A stretch of 64,000 bases of DNA from Vitrella brassicaformis CCMP3155 (lineage: Eukaryota; Protista; Chromerida). The stretch spans positions 186,001-250,000 of the forward strand of contig CDMY01000635.1 in the NCBI GenBank assembly GCA_001179505.1, given 5' to 3'. How positions within the stretch are numbered: the stretch's first letter is position 1; every line of letters starts with the position of its first letter. The position numbers and the translations under genes were made by a program. Below, in pieces: positions 33,536-60,562 of the stretch. The notes under the pieces are model-generated. The model saw only the letters and a list, made by a program, of their open reading frames with translations, had not been told where the DNA came from and ran no database searches.

Positions 33536-35502
33536 TGTGTGTGGTGCCCCCGTGCCCCCGTACCTTGTCATTGTTGTCCAGGAAGCGTTTGACCTGCAGG
33601 ATGGCCACTTCTGGGACCACAGACATACTGGTGGCCTTGGAGGCGTCACGCTTGCGCCCACAGGCCTCACACTGGTACCTGACACACACACAAAGACACA
33701 GAGAGATACACACACACACGACACGTGCTGTGTGTGTGGATTGGATTGGGTGGGTGAGGTGCCTCCTTACTGGTTGTCGCCCTGCAGTGACTCCTGCGCG
33801 AAGTGCGATCTCATGCACTCGTCAACGCTAGCAGACTGCCAAAGGACACACACAGAGAGAGAGCAGAGAGATGCAACAAACACATCAACCACGTCTCGCC
33901 TGCCTCCCTCCCTCCCTCCCTCTGTGTCAGTCTGATGGGTGCGTGAGTGTGTACCTCACCTCGTCCGTCATGCCGTTGCCAGGTATGGGGATGGACATGA
34001 TCCAATGGGGCTCATCTCGCGTGCTGACCTTGCCGCAACACTTGCACGTCACCACCGTACGTTGCACACCTGACGCAACCAACAATAGTGAGTGACACAC
34101 ACACCACCCTGACTGACCACTTGTGGGTGTGTGCTGTCGTGTGGTGTGGTGTGGTGTGGGTGAATGGAGCGGTGCTGCGGCCCCACCTCTGAAGAGTTTG
34201 GAGACGGGCGTCTCGGTGGTGTGGTCGGCTCCCGCCTGCTCGAGGGTGATGTCGGTGGCCCCACTGTCCGACAACATGTCCGCCAGGATCTCGCGGTGGA
34301 GGGTGTCCAGAAAGAAGGTCGTCGCCTCTGCAACGTCCTCCTGCTTGCCAACACCTGCACACACACAGAGACAGAGAGGGAGACATGTGTGTTGGGCCGG
34401 GGGGCGGAGGGAGGGAGGGAGGGAGGGAGTGTTTGTGTGGTGTGGTGACTGACCGAAGTTGGGGCACGTCCGCATGAGGGTGTAGAAGAAGGTGCTGGGT
34501 GTGATCTTGAGATTCAGACAGTCGGCCTTGTCCAGCAGCACCTCGCTGCGCTCGGCCGCCCGCTGCTTCGAAACTCTCTCCTTCTCGCCAACCGTCCACA
34601 TGGCGCTGATCCATCCATCCACCACACACCAGACAACACACATAGAGAGAGGGACAGATGAGCGAGGTCTTGTCTGTGGTCTGCTTGTGCGTGCGTGTGG
34701 TGCTTCCTTCGGTCTTACCTTGTGACGAGCACCGTCTCCCAAAGTAGTGACGAACTCGGTGCCTTGTGGTCGGCTCTCGTGGCGCGGCCTCCCCTTCCCA
34801 AACGACCTAGGTTCTCGGTGCCCTTGTCTGCACACACAAGAATCGACCAGGAAGAGCCGTGAGCGGTGGTGGACTTCTCCCACCTGCAGCTGTCTGTCTG
34901 TCTGTCTGTCTGTGTGTCTGCGTCAGTTGGTATCAGTCAAACGTACCGCTCAGCTTCGGAGCGTAAGCCTCGAACCGGCGAACCAGTGACTTCTTCCGGA
35001 GGGTATACGACGAGCCACCTGACCGACAGCCAGAGAAGAAGGAGTCCAACCAACGAACGATGCAGTCAGTCAGTGTGTGCGTCGTCTGTCGCCCTGTGCT
35101 GTGCTGTGCTGCGTTCTTGGGTGGCTCGGCTTCTTACTCTTGAGTAAGAAAAGGACTAGGGGGCGCACACGGAGCACGTTCTGGAGCAAGGACGACATAT
35201 AGCAGGACTGCTTCATGATGTTGAAGAACACCACATGTCGCGGCCACTGCAGCCCACGCATACAGCCACAACAGCACCATATAGCAGTGCACAATGCCCC
35301 GAGAGACGAGGAATGCCCTCAGGTCGCTCACCCTTTGCAGCCACTGCTCGTCATACGGCACCGGGCTGGCGAACTGTGGGCTGTTGGATACTACTGCGAG
35401 GGTGGACGCCCTGCCCTTGGCTGCGGTGGGCGAAGGGGGACGGGGAGAGGGTGACCGAGCAGCTGATCGAGAGCGGCCTTTCCGGCCTTTCGTTGAAGGC
35501 AT
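30727..35502 (-). CDS. Ubiquitin-specific protease (peptidase C19) with long disordered C-terminus
   Basis: Cys box NIMKQSCYMSSLLQ, QEDVAEATTFFLDTLH, SKLFRG, CKCC and CEAC zinc-ribbon pairs, ILQVKRF, His box VVVHKGSSAVEGHY, WCLYDDS, AYMAYY. Confidence 0.9.
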
Positions 35503-35575
35503 GGTGGACGGGGCTGCTTCTCAACGCGGTACGGTGGCGTCAACTTCCCTCACGAACGTCATTTCGACTTTCCTG

Positions 35576-35621
35576 TTTCGGTTGCGAGCTTGGCCTGTCT
35601 GAAACCCTACACCCAAACCCT
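35576..35621. promoter_or_regulatory. Divergent-promoter module: TGCGAGCTTGGCC plus AAACCCTA/AAACCCT
   Basis: tttcggttgcgagcttggcctgtctgaaaccctacacccaaaccct, near-duplicate of 27603-27649. Confidence 0.6.
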
Positions 35622-35711
35622 CCTGAATCGGCCAATTTGAAAATCAAAAGCCATCTTTTTACGGTAAAAAGACCGCTGGCCGTAGCTGCCCTGTCTTGAG
35701 CCATAAGTACT

Positions 35712-36654
35712 ATGGCGCCCGATAAAGAGAATGATGGCAAGTTCACGAGTCGATTGGAGAGAAGCAACTCCTACAGCACGCTGTGGTGGGACACGCAGTG
35801 CACGCACAGCCCAGATGAGCTCACACACTCCACACACAGGGCAGGCAGGACCTGGATCTTCGGAGGGAGGGAGAAGCAACACATTGTTTTGCTTTGCTTT
35901 GCATCTCATTGTTGTCCGTGGTGCGTCTGTGTCTGTCGTGTGTGTCACTCAGGGGCAACCGCGCGAATCTTCAGTCGTCTCGCTGTATCCACTACAACGC
36001 CCAGCAGCGGCGGTTCGACCTGCTCTGCCGCACTTGCCAATACAGCTTCCGCGTCGACGAACACGGGTCAAGCACACACAATCACACAATCACACAGCCA
36101 CACACTAACACAACGAACCGCACGTCAGTCACGTCATCTGCCCCTGTGTGGTGTGTGTTGTGTTGTGTTGGTTGGTTTGTCGGCTGGTTGATTGATGCAT
36201 GTGCGATGCAGTTGGCTTGAGCATCAGTACTGGGGTGTGCGTCTGCAGCCCGACGACGACCTGGACTTCCTGCACCACACCAACGTTGCCCAGCCGTTCG
36301 ACCCCATTCCTGAGAAAACGGAGAGATTCAAACCTCACCTCGCCGTCGCGTCAGACATCCTCAAGGTAGCTTGCTGCACAGGCAGGCAGACACGAAGGCA
36401 GGCAGGCAGGCAGACAGACAGACGGGGGATGATGGTCTGTCTCGATGTGTGTGGCTGTGATTGATTTGTGTGTGCAGCGTCAGTCGAATGACAGCAACCG
36501 CAACACATGGAAGGCGGCCACTATGATGCAGCGGCACCACTACAACGAGGAGGCCAGGTCAGCCAGCCAGGGGCCCTCAGACAGCTCAGCTCACAAACCG
36601 ATACACTTGACGTGTTCATGTCATGCGTCTACCGTGTGTCTGTGTGTGTCTGTC

Positions 36655-36690
<36 letters not shown>

Positions 36691-39600
36691 CGCCTCGAGA
36701 ATGCCTGCTGGAGACTCCTGGCCATGAAACAGAGACGGAAAGAGAAAGAGTAACTGAGCAGACACCAAACCACCCAGCGATTCACACACACACATCCATC
36801 CATCCATTCGTGTGTTGTCCGTGTGTGTGTGTGGTCAGGTGTGCCGAGACCGACTCCCCCCACACGTGCAGTGAGCACATCAGCATCCCCGTCACCGAGG
36901 AGGACCGAGCCCTGCTGTTTGAGGAGGCCATCCGCGCACTTATGACGGACAACCAAGACACCGTACTCAAGGCACAGGCGGCCAACAAGGAACACTTCGA
37001 CGTACGCGAAGAGGCCGACAAACGACACGAGGTGAGTGAGTGAGTTTTGTGCGCAGGCAGGCAGGCAGACAGACAGGCAGACACACACGAGAGAGTGAGA
37101 GGGATGTGCGTGTACGTCTGTCTGTCTGCCATGCTCGTGGTGTGTCTTTTTTTCAGCGTGAGATGTCCCGGATCCCTCCCGGGCTGGAGAGGGTCGGCAA
37201 GAACACCAAGTTGCTCGAGTTCTCCGATTACGGTCGGTTGGTGCTCACACACACACACTGACGTCAGTCGTGCATCCGCATCCGTCCATCCATGCATCCC
37301 TTCATTCATTCATTCCATGTATCGGCGGTTGGGTTGGATGGGATGTCACTCAGGTACGGGTGACTACCGCATTCCGAGTTTCAACGTGACGTATGGCGAC
37401 GGGAGCAACATCTCGCCCCTGCACTACAAGGCACACCGCATCACCCTGGGGGTGGTGCCCATGGACTGCAGCATGCCCATCGTCGGGGACGAACTTTCTG
37501 TACAGGTACGTAGCTAGGTAGGTCGGGTGGGGTGGCCATTTGCCCGACCATTGATTGGCGTGTGTGGGCTGGGCTAGAGTGATGCGAGCGCGTTGATCGT
37601 GACGCTGGCCGACCCCTTCACCGACCTGGAGGTCGATCTCCACTACGCCGTCTTTCAAGTGAGAAAGGACAAAGCCAGAAGACAACCATCATGCTACCTG
37701 CTTACGTCACGCCACGCAGGATCTGGACGTGATAGTGCGGCGCACGGTCATCCGCAACAAGTCGCCCGCGGGTGGCGTCACCGTTCAGAAAATCGCCTCG
37801 GCAACGGTTGATTTCGAGTCAGACCACTACCACTTCCTGCACCTCCCAGGAGAATACACAGCCGAGCGGTCAGCCACCCAAGCCAAACACAACACAACAC
37901 TCCCTCCCTTCCTTGTCAAAATCGACCCCACTCCCCCACTCATCCCAATCCCATCCATCTATCTGTGCAGGCAAGTGGTGTATCAGCCGATTGTCGAGGG
38001 CTACCGTGGTGTGGACAGCCGTCGGGGCACGTCCAGCCACCAGCACAACCCTTTCGCCGTGATATCCCGCGGCGACACGCCGCCCGAGGAGTCGCGGGGC
38101 GAGGTCTTTGGGTTCGCCCTCGTGTACAGCGGCAACCACCGTATCGAGATAGAGAAGACCGAGACGGGGAGGGTGCGATTCAACATCGGCATCAACCCGG
38201 ACCACTTCTCATGGTCTCTGGCGTCGGGGTGCTCTCTGGAGGCCCCCGAGTGCATCATGGCTTACTCAAACGAAGGTGGGTCTGTGAGGCAATCGATACA
38301 TAGATGGCGTGGTATGGTATGCTGTGTGTGGTGTGGTGTTGTGTAGGTCTGACGTACATGAGTCAGCAGCTGCACAAGTTGATCCGGAGCCACGTGATCC
38401 CTCAGGAGTTCAGGGGCAACTGGGTCTGCCCCATACTCCTCAACACATGGTACGTGACGCGCTCGCACGGTACACCACACCCAGCTGGTGTGCAGTGCAT
38501 GACACGACAGTGCGTGATCTGATCTACCTACGTATATCTGATCTGTCTGTGTGCGGTGCGCGGATGTGTTTAGGGAGGCGCTGTACTTCGACCAGACGCA
38601 CGACAACATCATGAGCATCGCCAAGGAGGCCAAAGAGTGAGTGAGCCGACACACACGAACGCCCCCATACACACACAGACAAACAGACGGCCAGGTATCC
38701 ATCACCATCTGTGTGTCTGCCGGTCATGGCATGCCACGCCAGTATTGGTGTGGAGCTGCTGGTGATGGATGACGGCTGGTACGGCCAGCGCAACAACGAC
38801 AAGACCTCACTCGGCGACTGGGACGTCGACCTCAAAAAACTCCCAAACGGTCCGCGCGAACACACACCTCTCCCCTCTCCCCTCTCCCCNNNNNNNNNNN
38901 NNNNNNNNNNNNNNNNNNNNNNNNNNNNNNNNNNNNNNNNNNNNNNNNNNNNNNNNNNNNNNNNNNNNNNNNNNNNNNNNNNNNNNNNNNNNNNNNNNNN
39001 NNNNNNNNNNNNNNNNNNNNNNNNNNNNNNNNNNNNNNNNNNNNNNNNNNNNNNNNNNNNNNNNNNNNNNNNNNNNNNNNNNNNNNNNNNNNNNNNNNNN
39101 NNNNNNNNNNNNNNNNNNNNNNNNNNNNNNNNNNNNNNNNNNNNNNNNNNNNNNNNNNNNNNNNNNNNNNNNNNNNNNNNNNNNNNNNNTCCCCCCCCCC
39201 CCCCCCTACACACACATCAGTTTGTCGCTGCACCATAGATGCACACACACGTACGTGGCATGGCAGGTCTGAAGGCGTTGGTGGACGAGGTGAACGGATT
39301 GGGTCTCAAGTTCGGCATCTGGGTGGAGCCCGAGATGATATCGGTGGAGAGCAAGCTCTACGAGGCCAACCCGGAGTGGGCACTGGGGCAGTCCGGCAAG
39401 TCGAGGTCAGAGGGCAGGAACCAACTCGTCCTCGACTTCACACGAAAAGACGTACGTACGTGAGTACTGTGTGTGATCGAAAGACAGGTACCTGTCTGTG
39501 TGTGGTGACTGACTGACTGTTGTGCAGGTGCGCGATTACATCTACGGCAAGTTGGAGGCGATATTAAACAGCGCCAACATCGAGTACGTCAAGTGGGACT

Positions 39601-39727
39601 GCAACAGGCACCTCACCGAAGTCTACTCCAGACAACTGCCACCTTACAGACAGGTGAGGTGGATCTCACACTCAGACACATACATGCATGAGCACTGTCT
39701 ATCTCTCTCTCTCTGTGTGTGTGTGTG

Positions 39728-39761
<34 letters not shown>

Positions 39762-41439
39762 CGTGTGTGCAGGGTGAGGTGTTCCACCGCTATGCGTTGG
39801 GTGTGTATGAGGTGTTCCAACGGGTCCGCACCAACTTCCCACACATCATCGTCGAGACATGTGCCGGCGGAGGGGGACGATTCGACGTTGCCATGCTCAA
39901 ATACGGGCCACAGGTAGTGTTGTATTATTATATAATGACGATACACACACACACACACACAGGCACTCACATCACAAAGACGATTCAACACACCTGGTGT
40001 GTGTGATGTGATTGGGTGTGTGTGCGTCAGATATGGGCGAGCGACAACACCGACGGCCTTGCGCGGATCCGCATCCAGTACGGCACGAGTATGGCCTACC
40101 CCATCTCATCCATCGGCTCTCACATCTCCTCGGTCCCTAACCACCAGGTAGGCCAGATCCACACACACACACACACACACCAAACAAGAGTACATGGCCA
40201 GCCAGTGCGGTGCAGTGCATGCGTGTTTGTTCAATCGTGTGTGTGTTGATTTGATGTGTATGATATGCACCGATCGGTCGATCGGTCGGTCGGTCGGTCA
40301 GACGTTCCGTCGGACCCCACTCAAGACGCGGTTCGTGGTGGCCCTGTGCGGCACCTTTGGCTATGAACTCGACCTCACCAAGGAGGTCACACCCAAAGAG
40401 GTGAGCGCGCAGACAAGGGCATCGCATCTATGTGTGTTGTCTGATATGTGGTGTGGTGTGGTGTCTGGTGTCTGATGCGTGTGTGTGCAGAAGGAGCAGC
40501 TCAAGGCGATGAATCGGCTGAGGACCAGGCTGGCGCCCATCATCTTCCACGGAGGTACGTGCCTCACCTTAGCTCACGTCACATCAGCCAGCCACCCACC
40601 AGCTGTCCATCTGCCGCACTGTGTTTCGTCTTGTGGTCGCACAGACTTTTATCGGCTGTGGAATCCTTTCTGCTCGACCAACAACGTGGCGGCGTGGATG
40701 TTTGTCAGCCCCAACCGCCTCAAGGCCCTCGTCTTCGCATTCGTCACATTCAAGAAGACACTCGGCAGATACCTCCCACGGCTGCGGGTGAGCGAGCCAC
40801 CCACACCCACACCCACACCCACACCCACAACACACAGACGGCTCTGTTTCTGTCGTTCTGCTGTGCAGCTGCGTGGGCTAGATCCGCATCAGAAATACGT
40901 CGTGAGTGAGCTCGTGCCCACCACAATCAGGTAAACTCAGTGCGTGTCTCTCGCACGTGTGCGTGCCATTCCATTCTGCCTTTCATCCATGCAGGCGCAT
41001 CACGTCGGTGCAGTTTGCCGAGGACCAGGATCGGCCGGTCTACCAGTTCGGAAAGAAGACACTCGAAATCAGCGGACTCGTAAGCACCACCTGGACACAC
41101 ACCACAAGCACCACAAGCACCGCCGCCCCCACCACACACGCCGCTGTCTTGCCATCCACCGTCTGGCACGTTCAGGCGCTGCTCAATGTTGGTTTGCCGA
41201 TCAAGCTGGAGTTTGACGGCGACGCCATGCTGATGGAGCTCACCGCCATGAGCGCACACACCACCACATGCGCCATGACGCCGTCCGCCTCATTCGTGGA
41301 CCCGAAAGCACACCCCGAGAGCCCCCTGTCTCTATCCCCCATACAGCCCCCGACCCACCAGCACGAGATGGCGATGACGATGCTGGAGCCGCCGCCGGAT
41401 GAGGTCCCACGAAGCATCTCGCACAGACGGATCATATGA
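35712..41439 (+). CDS. Glycoside hydrolase family 36 alpha-galactosidase (melibiase) with inserted module and no signal peptide
   Basis: [86 protein letters not shown] (nucleophile), [19 protein letters not shown] (acid/base), FGYELDL. Confidence 0.95.
38890..39189. other. Assembly gap (300 N) inside a GH36 intron
   Basis: N run between a GT donor after KLPNG and the next exon; flanked by C-rich tracts. Confidence 0.95.
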
Positions 41440-42802
41440 TGGACGGATGGATGGATGGATGTGTTTATTGGGCTGGTTGGTTGGTTGATGGGGTGGATGG
41501 CTGTAAGGTGTGTTGGGCAGAGCAGGGTTACGGGAGGGGGGAGGGGAACTCGATGCGTGGCGGGTGGGTGTCTGCCCGTGTGTCTGTCTGAGTCGATCTG
41601 TGTGGAGGCTTGCAGAGAGGTTTGTTTGTCTGGCGTCAGCCATAAGTAGGAATCGAATCTTCACGAGTGTGTATTCAAGTATAAGTGCCTTCCGTCCTGC
41701 TTTCCTTCCTTTGTCTGTGTCGATACTTTCAGCGACTCACTCAGCCCCACCTGTCTGTCTGTCTGTCTGTCTGCTTTTCCACATACATATATGCGTTGTT
41801 TCCTTTTGAGTTGTAGAGAGGTTTCCTTCTGCATACACAACTTCCTGCCTGCCTGCCTGCCTGCCTGCGTATGACTATCTGTGTGTGCATGCACCTTCCT
41901 TCACCCATTCATCTAGTATTGCTCGATCCCAGCTTGTCTTGTCTTGTCTGTCTTGTCCTGTTGTCTTGAATATCGTCACTCACCACGTGCACGCGGCCGC
42001 CTGCCTTTTCCATTCAGGCGCAGCGGCACATAATGCTCATGAATGAGAGAGCCAACGCATCGAGAGAGAGGGGTGGTCCTTCGTACCGACCTATACACAC
42101 ACACGTGAGTGAGTGAGTGAGTGAGTGAGTGAAGGCATGCAATGCAATGCTGCCCCGTCCGTTCATCCACCCACCCACATCCCTCCACCAGACATACACC
42201 CACCCCCTGGTGTACCGATTTTCCTGACGGCCGGTATGTGGGTGCACTCACACACACACACAGAGTCTTGTTGTCTGGATGTCGCCGTGCGTGTGTGCGT
42301 CTGCGTGTTTGTGTGTGCCGTGCAGTGCCAACAATGACGTGAGAGTGAGCAGAGAGGGGGGGTTTACGTCTGCATGCATATGTGTGAGGGGTGGGTGCAT
42401 TGCGCAAAGCGACCTGAACCAATTGTGCCTGCCCGTATATTGACAAATAACTTACTCATTGTTCACGTAACTAACGAGTTTGTCTGTCTGTCTGTCTATC
42501 TGTGCCAAGAGAAGCGAACATCTATCTAATGAATGCAACCGATCCGACATACACGATCGACGACCGCATACATACACACATACACACATTCACACATACA
42601 CACAACGCAAAACACATATCGACGATCCGTAACACATACGTACACAGACACAGACACAGGCAGCAGAAAGCCAATTGACCAGCCTGTGCGGTCTCACTCT
42701 GTCGTTTTTCCACTCGTCCGTCGTGTACCGACAAACAGTCGACAACAAGCAGCCGCTCAGGACATCAGTCAGTCAGTGAGTGAGTGAGCCAATCAGCGTG
42801 TG

Positions 42803-54220: not shown

Positions 54221-57200
54221 ATGATGGCCGCCGCCTCACCGTCTGTCGAGGAGCAGTTCTCGAGGCTCTCTTTGCAAGGTCAGCAGCCGTCCCAAGACCA
54301 CGCAGATGAGGGAGTCCTCGGCTACTATTCGATGCCCACTCTTCACGGCGACAAAGTCATCTTTGTCTGTGAGGATGACCTCTGGCGAGGCACTGTCAGC
54401 GGTAGCCCTCGATGGTCACCACCGCATCGGTTGACATCCGGCCTGCAGTGCTCCTTCCCGCTGCTGAGCCCTGACGGCAAGACGGTGGCCTTCAGTGCCG
54501 AGGTGGGCGACAAGGGAGCCACGGAGGTCTTCACCATGGCCAGCAGTGGGGGGGCTATCAACCGACTGACTCATTTCGGTACCCACGCACTTAGAACAGC
54601 AGAATCGTACGAGCCATCCATCCATCTATCGAGTGTCTGTTCTGTGTCCTAGGTTCGTACGCCGCTCCCGTCGCGTGGCAGCTTGACGGCAAGAGCGTCA
54701 TCGTCACATCGACCTACGAGCAGATCAACTCCTACCACCAACACCTGTTCCGCGTCGCCGTTCCCACAGCCGACACCGACCCGACCTCGGCCCACCCCCA
54801 CCCCCTTCCTCTCAGTCTCGGCCTCGCCGACTCATGTGCTTTCGCGACCACCGGCAACGGCACACAGGATCCCTCCTCTGCTGTGCCAAGGTTGCTTGGC
54901 CGGCACACGAGTGACCCCCACATCAGTCAGTTCAAGGGCTACAAGGGAGGTGCCTCAGGAGTCATCTGGATCGACCCGCAGGGCGATGGCGAATATGCCA
55001 AGCTGGAGCTGAGGCGTCGTGGTGGTGGTGGTGGTGATAGCGAGGAGTCTCGAGAGGGCGTGAGCGTGGGGAGCCCCATGTGGTTGGGGGATAGGGTGGT
55101 GTTTGTGGCTGAGGACCTGCAGATGAAGCCCTATGTGGATGGGGACACTGCTGCGGGGGCGGGGGCGTGTGCCAACATCTTCAGCTGCAGCCTGCAGGGG
55201 GACGACGTCCGACGACACACGTTCCAAAAGTAGGCCTGTGGAACGAAACACCGAATGTATGGGACTTCTCTAGCCAGTACATCCATCGTGTGCTGGCGGG
55301 TCAGGGACCACTATGTGCGCAACCCCACCCTTGAGAGCGGCCCGGGGGCCCATCGGGTGGTTTATCATGCGGGCGGAGATCTCTTTGTGCTCGACCTGGG
55401 ACAAGACTGCCGCAGCGGTAGGCACAGATGGATACCCACCTCACCTGTGAGATTCTTCGCTGCATGTCTGTCTGCCTGTCTGTCTGTCTGTCTGTCAGTG
55501 TCAGCACCTGTCCACCTGGATTATCGGCTGTGGACGGCCCGTACCAAGCGTCAACCGCGCATCGTCCAGCCATCCGACTATCTAGAGGAATACTGCATAC
55601 ACCCGAAAGTAGCCAGCCGGGAGAGGAACGACCAACCGACCAACAAACACGACGTCGCTGTTTGGTTTCGTTCGTTCAGGGTCACCACATAGGCGTGATA
55701 GCCCGTGGTCAGCCATTTGAGATGGCTCTCTGGGAGGGACCCGCACTCCCTCTGAACCTCTCGTCGCTGCACAGGTATACTATACACCGACGTAGCTGCT
55801 CGCTACTACCCGGTCGATAGATAGGTTCCTTCCTTCAGTTATGGATCTGTCCCGTTTTGTTTTGTGTTGCCTGCCTGCCAGATGTTACGGTGCCCATTAC
55901 CTGAGCGACGGTCGCCTGGCCACCTTTTGCCTGCCACCAGACGGACCCATCCAACTCATGGTCAGTCGGTGCCGCATGTCCACGCGTGCACAGAGTCACA
56001 CAACAGCCAGTCGTCTGTTTCTTTGCTGCCTGCATCCCCTGCATCCATCTGTCAGGTTCGTTCCATGGCCGAACGCGACCCTAATGAGTGGCTGAGGGCG
56101 CTGGCAGAGGAGGAGATGCAAGAGAGCCAGGGTCAGCCGAGGGTCGAGCCCTACATTTCCGATCTCCTGCAGCCCGCCGACGCACCACCCCTCCTTCCAG
56201 TCGACCTCAGCTGGGCCGACGGCAGCACCGACCCTGTGGATGTGGGCCTGCCAGAGGATGTCGAGTCGTCGCCCACCAGCTCGTGCATTGCAATGGTCAA
56301 CCATCGCCTGGAGCTGCTGCTCATCACACTGGACGATACTGACAAGCCGCAAAGGGAGAAGGGCAAAGGCAGGGGAAAAAGTGGTAGAGATGGGGGCGGC
56401 CGTGAGTCGTGGGATGCGTGTGCGTCCCGTCGGATAGCGAGCGGCGGCGTGACCGGCAGGGTGACTGTGGTGTGCCGTGGGGAGCATGAGGGCGGCATAG
56501 GGGGCCTGGCATGGAGCCCCGACGGACAGTGGCTGGCATTCGCATATATGGTCAGCAAGTGCCAGTGAAGCGATCATTGCACCTGCCTGCGTCGGTTGGT
56601 TGGTCTGTACGTCCCGTGTACGTGTGTACGTGTGTGTCAGTCGTCGGCTGAGGCGTCCGTCATCCGGCTGTACCACGTGCCCACGGGGCAGCTGGCTGAC
56701 GTGACCAAGCCGCGGTTCAAGGACTTCTCACCCGCATTCGACCGAGGCGGCCGCTACCTCTACTTCTTATCCAACCGGGCCTTCATCACACGAGAGGTAG
56801 GTACCCAACCAAACAGCGTCCTTCTTGCCTGCCATTTGTGTGCTGATGTGATGTGTGTAGGATGAGGTGCATTTCGACCTGGGATTTGCGGGCTCCATCC
56901 GTCCGTATGCGGTGACACTGCAGCGCTCGACGCCCAGCCCGCTGAAGCGCCTCCCGACCGCACCAGCAGACGACCACGACGAGGAGGAGGAAGAATCGGA
57001 AGACGAAGACGAAGACGAAGAGGAATCGGAGGACGATGACAGCGACGACGAGGTGGGCCGATCGGTGGGAATGCGAGATAGAGAGAGAGAGAGAGAGACA
57101 CAGCGCAGGTCTGATCTGTGTTGTCTTCTTTCTTTGTGGTGTGTGCCACAGGATGGTGATGAGGGTGAGGAGGATAAGTCTGCGCCTCCCCCCGTGCTGA

Positions 57201-58243
57201 TCGACCTCGACGGCATCCACCGGCGGATACTCGAATTCCCCCTGCCTGCAGGCGACTACAGACAGGTAGGTGCTGCCACCCACCTCACCTCGTGCGTCGC
57301 GCCTGCACCTGCGTGTCCGTGTGTGTGAATGCTTGGGTCGCATCGCATTCATGCATTGCAATGCAGGTGGACAGTCTGGCCGCTGAGGGCTCTAGCGTCC
57401 GTCGCGGCGGGATAGTCTTTGTGCGTCGTCACCTCAAGGGCGGGCGGAAGGCCGATGTGCGCGAGGGGCCTCAGGAGGAAGAACAAGAGGGCAAGGGACA
57501 CCTCTTCAGGTCAGGCAGTAGCGACCCGACGGACCGACGGGAGAGAGAGAGAGAGAGAGAGAGCTCTCATAATATTATGCATTCACACATGTGTCGTGCG
57601 TGTCTTTGTGCGCTGTGTGTCTGTGCAGTTTCGACTTCAGCCGTATGAAGGAGCGGAAGCTGGCCGACGATGTGGACTCATTCCAAGTGTCACACGACGG
57701 ACGGGTATGACTCACACACAGATCAGCAACACACCGGAAAGGTACCCTGCATGGCTCTCTCTGGACTCTTCAGACCACCGCCCTGCTGTGTGAAGAAGAC
57801 GACGAGACCACACTGCGCGTCTATGAAACCGGTGAGTGGCCCGGCCGTTAATTGGGGGGTCCTGCATGTGTGCTGGTGTGTGTGCAGGTGTCAAGCCCAG
57901 CGAGGAGGACAGCGACGGTGAGGACATCGACGAGGACCAGCCGGGGAGGGAGTCGGGACTCATCGATATCGACGGCAGGATCACTCTCGAGGTCGGCAGG
58001 GAGGGGAGGGAAGGGGAGGGATGGGATGGGTGCTGCCACCATTGGATGGATGGATGGATGGATGGGCGTGTGGTGTGCAGGTGACCCCAGCGGACGAGTG
58101 GGTGCAGATGTTTGCCGAGACCTGGCGGCGGCTGGGGGAGTTCTTCTTCGACAAACACATGGGCGGACTCAACTGGAACAGAATCAAACACAAGTAGGCA
58201 TGGCATGGCATGCACAACGTCCTCACTCACACCGCCCTACCCA

Positions 58244-58275
<32 letters not shown>

Positions 58276-60562
58276 GGGGTGTGTGTGTGTGTATGTGTGT
58301 GTGTAGGTATTGGCCGCTGTTGGGTCGGCTCGGCTGTCGTCGAGAGCTGACTGACGTGATAGAGGAGATGATAAGCGAGCTGGGTGTGGGGCACACGTGG
58401 ACATACGGCAGGGGAGACGATACCGAACACAAACAGCTCCAGCACGACGACGACGCACAGGGGTTTCTCGGCGCTGACTTCGACTGGTCTGAGGAAGCGC
58501 AGGCATACCGAATCACACACATGGTATGGCTGTCTGTCTCACGGACAGGCGGATGCTCATTTCCTTCCTCTGCGCTGCGCTGCGCTGCGTGTGGTGAATG
58601 GTATGCTTTGCTGGCAGGTGTGTGGCGACGCGTGGGACGCCTGTGGGGGCGGTCCCCTGTCGGCAGTGGGTGTTGGTGAGGTCAAGGAGGGCGACTACGT
58701 CGTGGCCATCGATGGCCGCCGCCTGTCTCGACACATCACCCCACAACACACACTCAGAGACAGAGCTGGCAAAGAGGTACACACGTACAACCGGACGGAC
58801 ACACGCCCACGCATATATCAACGCCTGCCTCTTCTGCACTGCACGCGTCAGGTGTACGTGACCATTGTGCCTTCCCGCGACCTCCCCGCCTATCTGGCGT
58901 GGAAGAGCGCCGACACTCCTTCCTCTCCCTCTCCGCCCACAGCCCCACCCCCACCGGCCGCAGCTGACCGCCGGAAGGACAGGGAGAGGGCCAGCAGCAA
59001 GGATAAGGACAAGGGCGGCGGCAAAGGCAGCAAGGGCGGTGGCACCACAGGGTTCCTGACCAAGCGGCGAGACAAGAAGCGGCAAGGCGGCGGGAAGGGG
59101 CACAAGCACAAGGGCGGAGGAGGAGATGACGGTAGGGGAGGTGGTGGTGGTGGTGGTGGGAGCCGAATTGAGATGCAGATGCTCCACCCGCCGTGGCGCA
59201 CGTGAGTCACGGCTTTCTCTGACTATCTACTCACTCTGTGTGCGGCACCTGGTGAGTCGATGTGTTTGTTGTGTGTGTGTGTCGGTTTGTGTGTTGCAGA
59301 GTGCGCGTCAAGGCTGTGGGTGTGGAGTGCGACCGTGTGGGTCGGTGCAGGGACTGGGTGGAGAAGAACGGAAACACCGTGCACACACGAACCAATGGAC
59401 GAGTCGGTGAGCTGCCTGACCAGACAGACCATGTTGGCGTCTATGCCATCCATGGCCATATGTGACTCTATACCTCTCTGTGTGCCGATATGTAGGTTAC
59501 GTGCGGGTGCCCGACACAGAGAGGCTGGGGTTTGCCGAGTTCCACCGGTAGGCGGCAGACAGACAGACATCAATCACACACCACACCACACCACACACAA
59601 CCTCCCCTTCCCTCCCTGTCTCAGCTACTATCTGGTGGAGTGCCAGCGAGACGCCCTCATCGTCGATGGTACCCGCCCACCCCCCCCCACACACACACGA
59701 ACACAAAAAGCACCGCCCATCTGTCTGCTCCTGCTCTCCTCTGCTCTCTCTCTGCAAGCAGTTCGTGGCAACCTAGGTGGCTACTCGTCCGAGTTGATGC
59801 TGGAGAAGCTGCAGCGGCGCCACCTGGGGTACAACGCCCCCCGTCAGGGGCGGGGCGTCCCCACATCCTACCCCCGCCACTCGGTCGACGGCCCCATGGT
59901 CATGCTGGCAGACGAGAACGCCGGCAGCGACGCCGACGTCTGGTGCCACACATTCAAACTACTCAAGCTCGGACCACTGGTGGGGTGGGAGCGACAGACA
60001 CTGGGAGACGGACGAATGGCACCGCGCCATGCCATGGAAAACACGCGTCAACTAACTGAACTGCATGGTGTGTGTGAGTCAGGTTGGCAAGCGAACATGG
60101 GGCAGTGTGGTGTCGGTCGGTCCGTGTGACGTTGACCTGGTTGACGGCGGCACCGTGGCGGTGCCGTATGAGCACTACTTCACACACGACGTCGGCTTCG
60201 GCCTCGAAAACTGGGGGGTCGATCCGGACGTCACCGTCGAATACGCACCACAGCACTACGTATGTCCGTGTTGTGGCTACAGGACAGGATGGGATGGACG
60301 CCTTGGTGATGTGTAAGAGCACTTTTGTTGATATCTGTGTGTGGGTGTCTGTGTGAGGCAGCGGTCAGGCGTCGACCCGCAGCTTGACCGTGCTATCGAG
60401 ATGGCCATGAAGCTGCTAGACAAGGGGGACGAGGAGAGGCAGAACGTGAGAGCTCGGCTGCGAGAGTTCCCCCCCAACCCCCGGGCAGCCGTCATGTTTC
60501 CCCCGGGGGACGGAGGTGACCCCCCGTCCACACAGCAAGACAAGGACGGACGACTGATGTGA
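54221..60562 (+). CDS. Tricorn protease homolog (peptidase S41: beta-propellers, C1, PDZ, C2), with many spliceosomal introns
   Basis: GYYSMPTLHGDKVIFVCEDDLW, SPDGKTVAF, FKGYKGGASGVIW, WSPDGQWLAF, PAFDRGGRYLYFLSNR, EWVQMFAETWR, ELGVGHT, GFLGADF, EGDYVVAIDG, GYVRVPD, IVDVRGNLGG, DENAGSD, VGKRTWG, LENWGVDPD, DPQLDRAI. Confidence 0.93.

What the first reader, a model, noticed from the sequence alone, without database searches (positions are those of the whole stretch)
36249..37210. GH36 alpha-galactosidase carries an inserted DUF1752-like nutrient-signalling motif
Between GH36 N-terminal landmarks [10 protein letters not shown] and [13 protein letters not shown], which are only a few tens of residues apart in bacterial GH36 enzymes, there are roughly 170 spliced residues. 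These include [19 protein letters not shown]|[15 protein letters not shown] (exon 36690-36749). This matches the W-x(13-16)-R(L/M)ENxxWR signature of DUF1752, found in fungal nutrient regulators (AreA/Gat1 N-terminus, Mks1, Reg1). The enzyme also has an RSNSYS phospho-type N-terminal extension and no signal peptide. Inference: a cytosolic galactoside hydrolase directly coupled to a carbon/nitrogen-signalling interaction module. I know of no description of this fusion.
Basis: partly seen in the sequence, partly recalled or inferred. Interest (0 to 1): 0.72.

Follow-up and report, generated by a model that had tools for sequence, protein, structure and literature searches.

The report
Alpha-galactosidase with conserved DUF1752 motif insert
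A protist sugar-cleaving enzyme (GH36 alpha-galactosidase) carries, in a surface loop beside its active site, a short helical motif otherwise known from fungal nutrient regulators such as Reg1 and AreA, and the same insert is conserved in red algae, haptophytes, dinoflagellates, perkinsids and stramenopiles.

Summary
The window carries an intact, multi-exon GH36 alpha-galactosidase gene (35712-41440, + strand). About 143 extra residues sit between PFDP and [19 protein letters not shown], where Geobacillus AgaA has about 9.

Exon D (36690-36749, RLENACWR) alone scores 20.9 bits against Pfam PF08550 (DUF1752/GATA_AreA), exactly the cut-off. RNA contigs confirm that exon E is spliced to exon F and confirm five downstream introns. 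Exons B, C and D have no RNA cover, but frame, splice sites and homology support them.

The insert is not peculiar to this genome. At least 21 fetched GH36 proteins carry the motif at the same position, including Cafeteria, Galdieria, Prymnesium, Durusdinium and Perkinsus. W, R, E, N, W and R are invariant in 18 aligned sequences, and full-length PF08550 matches reach 31-32 bits. All fall in one clade.

AlphaFold2 of a homologue shows the motif as helices between disordered linkers, in the N-domain loop reported to line the positive subsites in AgaA.

The function of DUF1752 is unknown. In yeast Reg1, mutations K175, L194 and E195 abolish the 2-deoxyglucose response. A regulatory docking or sensing role is therefore plausible but inferred. 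No paper describing the fusion was found. I class it as a new variant of a known kind.

The parts
35712..35797 (+). Putative first exon ([28 protein letters not shown]..), with no hydrophobic signal sequence
   Evidence: ATG ORF. The GT donor at 35798 joins in frame to the acceptor at 35952/35953 (read). No RNA or homology support, so this is tentative.
35953..36066 (+). Exon A: first strands of the GH36 N-domain (..[20 protein letters not shown])
   Evidence: tblastn of P0026, P0032, P0038 and P0096 aligns here. The phase fits exon B.
36212..36365 (+). Exon B: [11 protein letters not shown]...NVAQPFDP, then the start of the insert ([20 protein letters not shown])
   Evidence: tblastn of many homologues at 44-53% identity. 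Canonical splice sites.
36478..36557 (+). Exon C: first half of the motif (..[20 protein letters not shown])
   Evidence: Its W-K aligns with the invariant W (usually followed by K or R) of the family. Splicing C to D gives a W-to-W spacing of 23, the same as P0064, P0032 and P0068; unspliced it would be 67. No RNA cover.
36690..36749 (+). Exon D: second half of the motif (S)[19 protein letters not shown]
   Evidence: PF08550 at 20.9 bits, E 3.2e-4, profile positions 17-28. Aligned to R[IL]ENxxWRL of 10 homologues. No RNA cover.
36839..37031 (+). Exon E: lineage-specific acidic, probably helical or disordered linker of the insert
   Evidence: An RNA contig of X2 joins 36903-37031 to 37157-37194. 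No word-sharing relatives were found.
37157..37232 (+). Exon F: end of the insert and the conserved [13 protein letters not shown]
   Evidence: RNA joints on both sides. tblastn of homologues.
37354..37505 (+). Exon G: GTGDYR strand-loop of the GH36 N-domain
   Evidence: PF16875 profile positions 52-86. RNA joints 37232|37354 and 37505|37578.
37578..41440 (+). Remaining exons of the GH36 gene: rest of the N-domain, the Melibiase barrel with YVKWDCNR and WASDNTD, the C-domain and a tail of about 70 aa, with the stop at 41438-41440. The N run 38890-39189 lies inside an intron.
   Evidence: Exon-by-exon Pfam gives PF16875 at 95.5 bits and PF02065 at 39-73 bits. Profile positions 71-104 and 106-167 flank the N gap. 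RNA contigs run from 38852 straight into 39270 (loose ends). tblastn.

Best explanation
**What the gene is.** It encodes a cytosolic subgroup-I-type GH36 alpha-galactosidase with an intact catalytic apparatus.

**Where the insert sits.** The short N-domain loop that in Geobacillus AgaA lies at about residues 60-68 is expanded here to about 143 residues. That stretch is inside the 50-66 loop reported to carry aromatic residues of the positive subsites.

**What the insert contains.** Most of it is variable and disordered. Embedded in it is a bipartite helical motif, W-K-x(15)-R-L-E-N-x-x-W-R. The motif is invariant across a eukaryote-wide clade and is a sequence-level member of Pfam PF08550 (DUF1752/GATA_AreA).

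**Shown here**
- The insert, its position and its conservation.
- Its profile match to PF08550.
- Its helical character between flexible linkers.

**Inferred**
- The motif is an exposed docking or sensing element tethered next to the active-site entrance.
- It couples galactoside hydrolysis to the same conserved partner or ligand that recognises DUF1752 in fungal Reg1/Reg2 and AreA/Gat1.
- It would act by controlling access to the positive subsites, oligomer assembly, or recruitment of a kinase or phosphatase to the neighbouring linker.
- A candidate substrate is a cytosolic alpha-galactoside such as raffinose-family sugars or floridoside/isofloridoside.
For: **GH36 identity**
- Exon-by-exon Pfam hits.
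- KWD and SDNTD motifs present.
- The homologue model matches AgaB 4fnq at TM 0.94.

**Insert position**
- P0064 residues 34-89 align to AgaA 4-59, and P0064 residue 196 aligns to AgaA 69.
- PMC5094572 describes the AgaA 50-66 loop as lining the positive subsites.

**Motif**
- Window exon D scores 20.9 bits.
- P0064 scores 31.3 bits over profile positions 2-27; P0096 scores 32.0 bits.
- 14 of 18 family N-termini hit PF08550 and no other family.

**Conservation**
- W, R, E, N, W and R are invariant in 18 sequences that are otherwise 17-40% identical to the first sequence in that region.
- 21 fetched proteins carry the motif, always between LEHLYWG and GTGDYR.
- Taxa include Cafeteria, Galdieria, Prymnesium, Durusdinium and Perkinsus.
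- All motif-bearing proteins fall in one clade, SH-aLRT 98.

**Structure**
- In the full-length model the motif forms helices 114-130 and 134-152, with pLDDT about 70-87. The flanks are below 50.
- The motif segment folded on its own is also predicted helical, pLDDT 80-87. This suggests an autonomous, exposed element.

**Function lead**
- Reg1 DUF1752 spans residues 173-204. The separation-of-function mutations K175I/T, L194F and E195D/Q lose the 2-deoxyglucose response.

**Expression**
- The E-F and downstream splice joints are present in RNA contigs.
Against: - No RNA read covers exons C or D.
- The window's own PF08550 score is only at the cut-off, and the joined C + D peptide was not scanned.
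- PF08550 is a 28-position model, so shared ancestry with the fungal motif cannot be separated from convergence.
- No partner or ligand of DUF1752 is known.
- No coordinates or PAE were available, so I could not test whether the helices dock on the enzyme core or on a neighbouring subunit.
- Several clade members lack the insert (P0034, P0157, P0166), so the enzyme can work without it.
- The substrate is unknown.
Confidence: 0.55

Rival explanations
1. The motif is a structural element of the enzyme itself. The two helices would pack on the N-domain or on the neighbouring subunit of the tetramer, and would reshape the positive subsites or stabilise the oligomer. On this reading the resemblance to fungal DUF1752 is convergence of a short amphipathic W/R/E/N helix.
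For: - The insert sits in the loop that shapes the positive subsites in tetrameric subgroup-I GH36.
- pLDDT reaches 87 inside the full-length model.
- Invariant Trp, Arg, Glu and Asn are typical of sugar-contacting or interface residues.
- PF08550 is short, so convergence is possible.
Against: - The motif is flanked by 10-35 or more residues with pLDDT below 50. The linkers vary from about 70 to 500 residues between species.
- The isolated peptide is predicted helical with the same confidence, so no dependence on the core is seen.
- End-to-end PF08550 matches at 31-32 bits are more than a loose resemblance.
- The spacing between the two half-motifs varies from 19 to 42 residues.
Confidence: 0.25
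2. The insert is a regulated splice cassette. Exons C + D + E total 333 nt and exon D alone is 60 nt, so either can be skipped in frame. Skipping would give isoforms with and without the motif. The motif-less form would be a bacterial-like enzyme with about 58 residues between the landmarks.
For: - Exon B ends and exon F starts in phase 0.
- The exon lengths are 80 + 60 + 193 = 333 nt.
- C to E without D also stays in frame.
- Insert-free relatives exist in the clade.
Against: - No skipping joint is seen in the RNA contigs. The only contig in this region includes exon E.
- Contigs drop rare variants, so this is untested rather than refuted.
Confidence: 0.1
3. Exons C and D are not real exons. 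On this reading the motif is a chance ORF fragment inside a long intron, and exon E is reached from another upstream exon.
For: - There is no RNA cover of 36230-36865 in X1 or X2.
- The window's PF08550 score is only at threshold.
Against: - B to E directly is out of frame, and exon E is in the mRNA.
- Both exons have strong GTGTGTGCAG| acceptors and GT donors.
- The same motif sits at the same place in 21 homologues.
- The spliced spacing equals that of P0064, P0032 and P0068.
- R.EN..WR occurs only once in the six frames of the window.
Confidence: 0.05

Closest known systems
Geobacillus stearothermophilus AgaA/AgaB (PDB 4FNR, 4FNQ), GH36 subgroup I tetrameric alpha-galactosidases
   Same: - Three-domain fold: homologue model TM 0.94 to the target, about 33% identity.
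- KWD nucleophile and SDNTD acid/base motifs.
- LxHxYWG and GxxD(F/Y)R landmarks in the N-domain.
   Different: - AgaA has about 9 residues where this protein has about 143 and relatives have 100-500.
- AgaA has no PF08550 motif.
- It is bacterial and unspliced.
DUF1752 / GATA_AreA (Pfam PF08550) of fungal Reg1/Reg2, AreA/Gat1
   Same: - The bipartite W-K...R-L-E-N-x-x-W-R motif.
- Profile matches above the gathering score in many family members and at it in the window.
- The motif lies in a disordered context.
   Different: - The host here is an enzyme loop, not the N-terminal region of a regulator.
- The organisms are protists and algae, not fungi.
- The function is unknown in both. The link to Reg1 residues K175, L194 and E195 is by numbering arithmetic and residue identity, not by an alignment I could make.
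Public orthologues with the same architecture: Cafeteria KAA0146682.1, Galdieria sulphuraria GJD11450.1, Prymnesium KAL3927713.1, Durusdinium trenchii CAK9058826.1, Perkinsus olseni KAF4723806.1
   Same: GH36 with the motif between LEHLYWG and GTGDYR. All sit in the same clade.
   Different: - At most 61% identity to the window's protein in the exon tested.
- Linker lengths differ greatly.
- Their sources name them only 'alpha-galactosidase', 'hypothetical protein' or 'unnamed protein product'.
Ruminococcus gnavus AgaSK (PDB 2YFN), GH36 fused to a sucrose kinase
   Same: A GH36 alpha-galactosidase that has acquired an extra module tying it to downstream sugar metabolism.
   Different: The extra module there is a C-terminal enzymatic domain. 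Here it is a short helical motif in an internal loop.

Membership tests
GH36 alpha-galactosidase (subgroup I type) | Glyco_hydro_36N domain (PF16875) | tested here: met
   Window exons score 34.2 and 95.5 bits (cut-off 27). Exon G scores 19.3 bits.
GH36 alpha-galactosidase (subgroup I type) | Melibiase catalytic barrel (PF02065) | tested here: met
   Four exons score 39-73 bits each. Profile positions run 71-255 and are contiguous across the N gap.
GH36 alpha-galactosidase (subgroup I type) | Catalytic nucleophile in KWD and acid/base in SDNTD | tested here: met
   YVKWDCNRH (exon 39528-39653) and IWASDNTDG (ORF 40016-40249) are seen. They correspond to D479 and D549 of AgaB (4FNQ) as given in PMC5094572.
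GH36 alpha-galactosidase (subgroup I type) | Glyco_hydro_36C domain (PF16874) | tested here: inconclusive
   One exon scores 19.7 bits, below the 27 cut-off. Homologues pass at 38-64 bits.
GH36 alpha-galactosidase (subgroup I type) | Alpha-galactosidase activity and tetrameric state | not testable with these tools
   Needs an enzyme assay and SEC-MALS or a structure.
DUF1752 / GATA_AreA (PF08550) | Profile score at or above the gathering cut-off (20.9 bits) | tested here: met
   - Window exon D alone scores 20.9 bits, exactly at the cut-off.
- Family members: P0096 32.0, P0064 31.3 (profile 2-27 of 28), P0068 26.3, P0111 24.9, P0026 22.5, P0031 22.0.
- The joined exon C + D of the window was not scanned.
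DUF1752 / GATA_AreA (PF08550) | Bipartite signature: W, a variable spacer, then R-x-E-N-x-x-W-R | tested here: met
   The window reads W-x16-RLENACWR across the C|D splice. All six residues are invariant in 18 relatives.
DUF1752 / GATA_AreA (PF08550) | Context: disordered regulatory region of fungal nutrient regulators (Reg1/Reg2, AreA/Gat1) | tested here: not met
   Here the motif lies in a loop of a glycoside hydrolase in non-fungal eukaryotes. Its flanks are disordered, as in the fungal proteins.
DUF1752 / GATA_AreA (PF08550) | Shared molecular function or partner | not testable with these tools
   The function is unknown even in Reg1 (PMC12520357).

The most novel reading that the evidence does not exclude
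DUF1752 may be a small sensor of sugars or sugar phosphates. Its two Trp residues plus Arg, Glu, Asn and Arg have the make-up typical of carbohydrate-binding sites. In this GH36 clade it would sit at the entrance of the positive subsites as a built-in allosteric gate or an extra subsite. In Reg1 the same module would be what reads the hexose-6-phosphate (2DG-6-P) signal. The GH36 proteins would then be the first structured scaffold on which the long-sought glucose-sensing step of the Snf1/AMPK pathway could be studied.
Probability: 0.1. Interest if true: 0.85.

Novelty: new variant of a known kind. Interest (0 to 1): 0.62.

Why it matters
**For DUF1752.** The motif has been treated as a fungal signature of unknown function. 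A 2025 genetic screen found mutations in and near it that make yeast Reg1 blind to 2-deoxyglucose. This report shows the same motif invariant inside a sugar hydrolase, next to its active site, across red algae, haptophytes, alveolates and stramenopiles. That has three consequences:
- The motif is old and not confined to fungi.
- It is tied again to sugar metabolism.
- It gets a crystallisable, assayable host protein on which binding partners or ligands can be tested.

**For glycoside-hydrolase biology.** This is a clade in which the loop reported to line the positive subsites in AgaA has become a long regulatory-looking insert. That may mark post-translational control of cytosolic alpha-galactoside turnover, possibly of floridoside or isofloridoside, in algae and protists.

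Tried and rejected
- **Word search with exon C + retained intron + exon D.** It gave only noise (E of 0.007 or worse), because the Cys/Val-rich intron translation dominated the words.
- **Word search with exon E.** No relatives, so exon E is a lineage-specific linker.
- **Word search with the motif alignment A3.** Only two short fragments (one from a JGI source, one from Symbiodinium sp. KB8). No fungal DUF1752 proteins were reachable because of the length filter, so I could not run a reciprocal profile test against real fungal members.
- **Motif profile against PDB sequences.** The only hit was a non-significant match (E 0.64) to the bHLH basic region of Cbf1 (..ERRRRENI). I reject this as chance. 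No solved structure contains the motif.
- **ESM Atlas feature search with the motif segment.** No usable hit.
- **14-3-3 binding as the shared function of DUF1752 proteins.** I considered this from memory of Reg1, Mks1 and Gat1 biology. It is not supported: PMC12520357 reports that its Reg1 missense mutants still bind 14-3-3, Glc7 and Snf1.
- **Simple exon-skipping artefact (B joined directly to F).** Rejected as the only form, because exon E is in RNA.
- **Paper searches for GATA_AreA/IPR013860 and for YNL144C/YHR131C.** Nothing on the motif.
- **One Pfam reference (40032-40148) was out of frame.** Its blank result means nothing.
Full report
**The gene**

Reading 35200-42600 with the ORF list gives a multi-exon gene on the + strand. 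Introns are short and GT/CA-rich, about 70-130 nt, with GT..AG ends.

Exon-by-exon Pfam scans, given by reference, place the exons in order on three models:
- Glyco_hydro_36N: up to 95.5 bits.
- Melibiase: four exons at 39-73 bits, profile positions 71-255.
- Glyco_hydro_36C: weak, 19.7 bits.

The catalytic signatures YVKWDCNR and WASDNTD are present.

The run of N at 38890-39189 is intronic, on two grounds. The Melibiase profile continues from position 104 to 106 across it. RNA contigs also pass from 38852 straight into 39270.

**The observation**

[10 protein letters not shown] (36216-36245) and [13 protein letters not shown] (37211 onward) are separated by exons B to F. All have ..CAG| acceptors and GT donors and fit each other's phases.

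| Exon | Coordinates |
|---|---|
| B (tail) | to 36365 |
| C | 36478-36557 |
| D | 36690-36749 |
| E | 36839-37031 |
| F | 37157-37232 |

Against Geobacillus AgaA, the homologue P0064 aligns 34-89 to AgaA 4-59 and resumes at 196 opposite AgaA 69. About 9 bacterial residues are therefore replaced by about 100 in P0064 and about 143 in the window.

**Splicing evidence**

Two runs (X1, X2) proved to be RNA: their contigs are 100% identical to the window and skip GT..AG introns.
- They confirm 37031|37157 (exon E to F).
- They confirm 37232|37354, 37505|37578, 37867|37971, 38448|38574 and 38636|38743.
- Exon E, the largest part of the insert, is therefore transcribed and spliced as modelled.
- Nothing covers 36230-36865, so exons B, C and D have no read support.

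Indirect support for exons C and D:
- B to E directly is out of frame.
- Exon D aligns to the motif of ten homologues.
- Splicing C to D gives a W-to-W spacing of 23 residues, identical to P0064, P0032 and P0068. The family range is 19-42. The unspliced spacing would be 67.

A local script only translated the joined exons, to check frames.

**Is it DUF1752?**

- Exon D alone (20 aa) hits only PF08550, at 20.9 bits (the cut-off), E 3.2e-4, profile positions 17-28.
- A full HMMER search of the 101-aa exon 37972-38274 against 1.84 billion representatives found 927 GH36 relatives. The top hit is only 61% identical.
- Many top hits are 900-1430 aa long with extra sequence before the GH36 core. Six of ten scanned carry a PF08550 hit there.
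- Twenty-one of 160 fetched proteins have R[ILMVR]EN..WR, always between LEHLYWG and GTGDYR.
- In an 18-sequence alignment the insert's W, R, E, N, W and R are invariant, while the surrounding linker is unalignable.
- Fourteen of the 18 N-termini hit PF08550 and no other Pfam family.
- Scanned as short segments, P0064 matches the model end to end (profile 2-27, 31.3 bits, E 1.8e-7) and P0096 reaches 32.0 bits.

The family is thus a sequence-level member of PF08550. Shared descent from the fungal motif cannot be proved for a 28-position model.

**Distribution**

Named members:

| Organism | Group |
|---|---|
| Cafeteria | stramenopile |
| Galdieria sulphuraria | red alga |
| Prymnesium | haptophyte |
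| Durusdinium trenchii | dinoflagellate |
| Perkinsus olseni | perkinsid |

On a tree of the catalytic region, all motif-bearing proteins fall in one clade of 21 rows (SH-aLRT 98). That clade is nested among insert-free proteins of about 720-750 aa, a length typical of bacterial GH36.

Seven rows of the clade lack the motif. Some are truncated gene models. Others truly lack the insert: P0157 and P0166 within the clade, and P0034 just outside it.

**Structure**

AlphaFold2 of P0064 with a 70-sequence alignment gave pLDDT 87.8 and pTM 0.87. The model matches AgaB 4fnq at TM 0.94.

The insert is modelled as:
- Helix 114-130, which holds W121-K.
- Helix 134-152, which holds RLENMSWR. The two helices have pLDDT about 70-87.
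- Flanking segments 93-111 and 154-187 below pLDDT 50.

The motif segment folded alone is one long helix with pLDDT 80-87. The helical propensity is therefore intrinsic, and I have no evidence that the motif docks on the core. Coordinates and PAE were not available to me.

The insertion point lies within the AgaA 50-66 loop. PMC5094572 describes this loop as carrying aromatic residues that stack in the positive subsites of the tetrameric enzyme.

**What the motif may do**

Papers mentioning DUF1752 or PF08550 number 11, and none concerns GH36.

The most informative is PMC12520357 (PLoS Genet 2025):
- DUF1752 is Reg1 residues 173-204, function unknown.
- Separation-of-function missense alleles make yeast insensitive to 2-deoxyglucose. 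They include W165G, I170T, K175I/T, L194F and E195D/Q.
- The authors say that the missense mutations they identified did not affect binding of Glc7, Snf1 and 14-3-3.

If the model's W (profile position 2) and R (position 17) are placed in 173-204, then K175 falls on the K after the first W, and L194-E195 fall on the L-E of R-L-E-N. That mapping is my arithmetic, not an alignment.

My best reading (confidence 0.55) is an exposed docking or sensing helix tethered at the mouth of the active site. It would couple alpha-galactoside hydrolysis to a conserved, still unknown partner or ligand.

Rivals:
- A purely structural or oligomerisation element that resembles DUF1752 by convergence: 0.25.
- An in-frame splice cassette (C + D + E = 333 nt; D = 60 nt): 0.1.
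- A false exon pair: 0.05.

Floridoside or isofloridoside as substrate is only an idea. It is prompted by the presence of red algae and Symbiodiniaceae among the carriers, and by the role of alpha-galactosidase in floridoside breakdown.

**Verdict**

- Observation: confirmed.
- Interpretation: partly supported.
- Novelty: a new variant of a known kind, namely a GH36 alpha-galactosidase clade with a conserved DUF1752 insert. The proteins are in databases but, as far as the searchable literature shows, undescribed.
- Interest: 0.62.

Noticed in passing
window 38890-39189: A 300-base run of N (assembly gap) lies inside the gene but within an intron (38850-39266). RNA contigs and the Melibiase profile both bridge it without loss of coding sequence.
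   Followed up: yes
window 36558-36689: The C-D intron (132 nt, (GT)n-rich) is stop-free in the exon frame. Retaining it would insert 44 Cys/Val-rich residues between the two half-motifs.
   Followed up: partly
window 36478-37031: Exons C + D + E sum to 333 nt between two phase-0 boundaries, and exon D alone is 60 nt. Skipping either set stays in frame and would remove the motif. No skipping joint was seen in the low-depth RNA contigs.
   Followed up: partly
P0054 (935 aa): A different GH36 relative carries an N-terminal HAD-type hydrolase domain (PF00702 at residues 84-178, 39.9 bits) in front of a complete GH36. This is another fusion of GH36 with a phosphatase-like module.
   Followed up: no
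P0201 and P0205 (Perkinsus olseni): Perkinsus gene models of 1167-2013 aa are named both 'Vacuolar protein-sorting-associated protein 28' and 'alpha-galactosidase'. They are probably merged neighbouring genes rather than a true fusion.
   Followed up: no
P0026, P0027, P0031, P0044: In some relatives (Cafeteria and others) the linker between the motif and GTGDYR is about 290-500 residues long. The insert tolerates very large disordered expansions while the motif itself stays invariant.
   Followed up: partly
window 41177-41440: The last exon adds a Pro/Ser/Thr/His-rich tail of about 70 residues after the GH36 C-domain. It has no counterpart in AgaA.
   Followed up: no
window 54221-60562: Another first-stage note on this window reports a heavily spliced tricorn-protease-like gene. 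I did not examine it.
   Followed up: no
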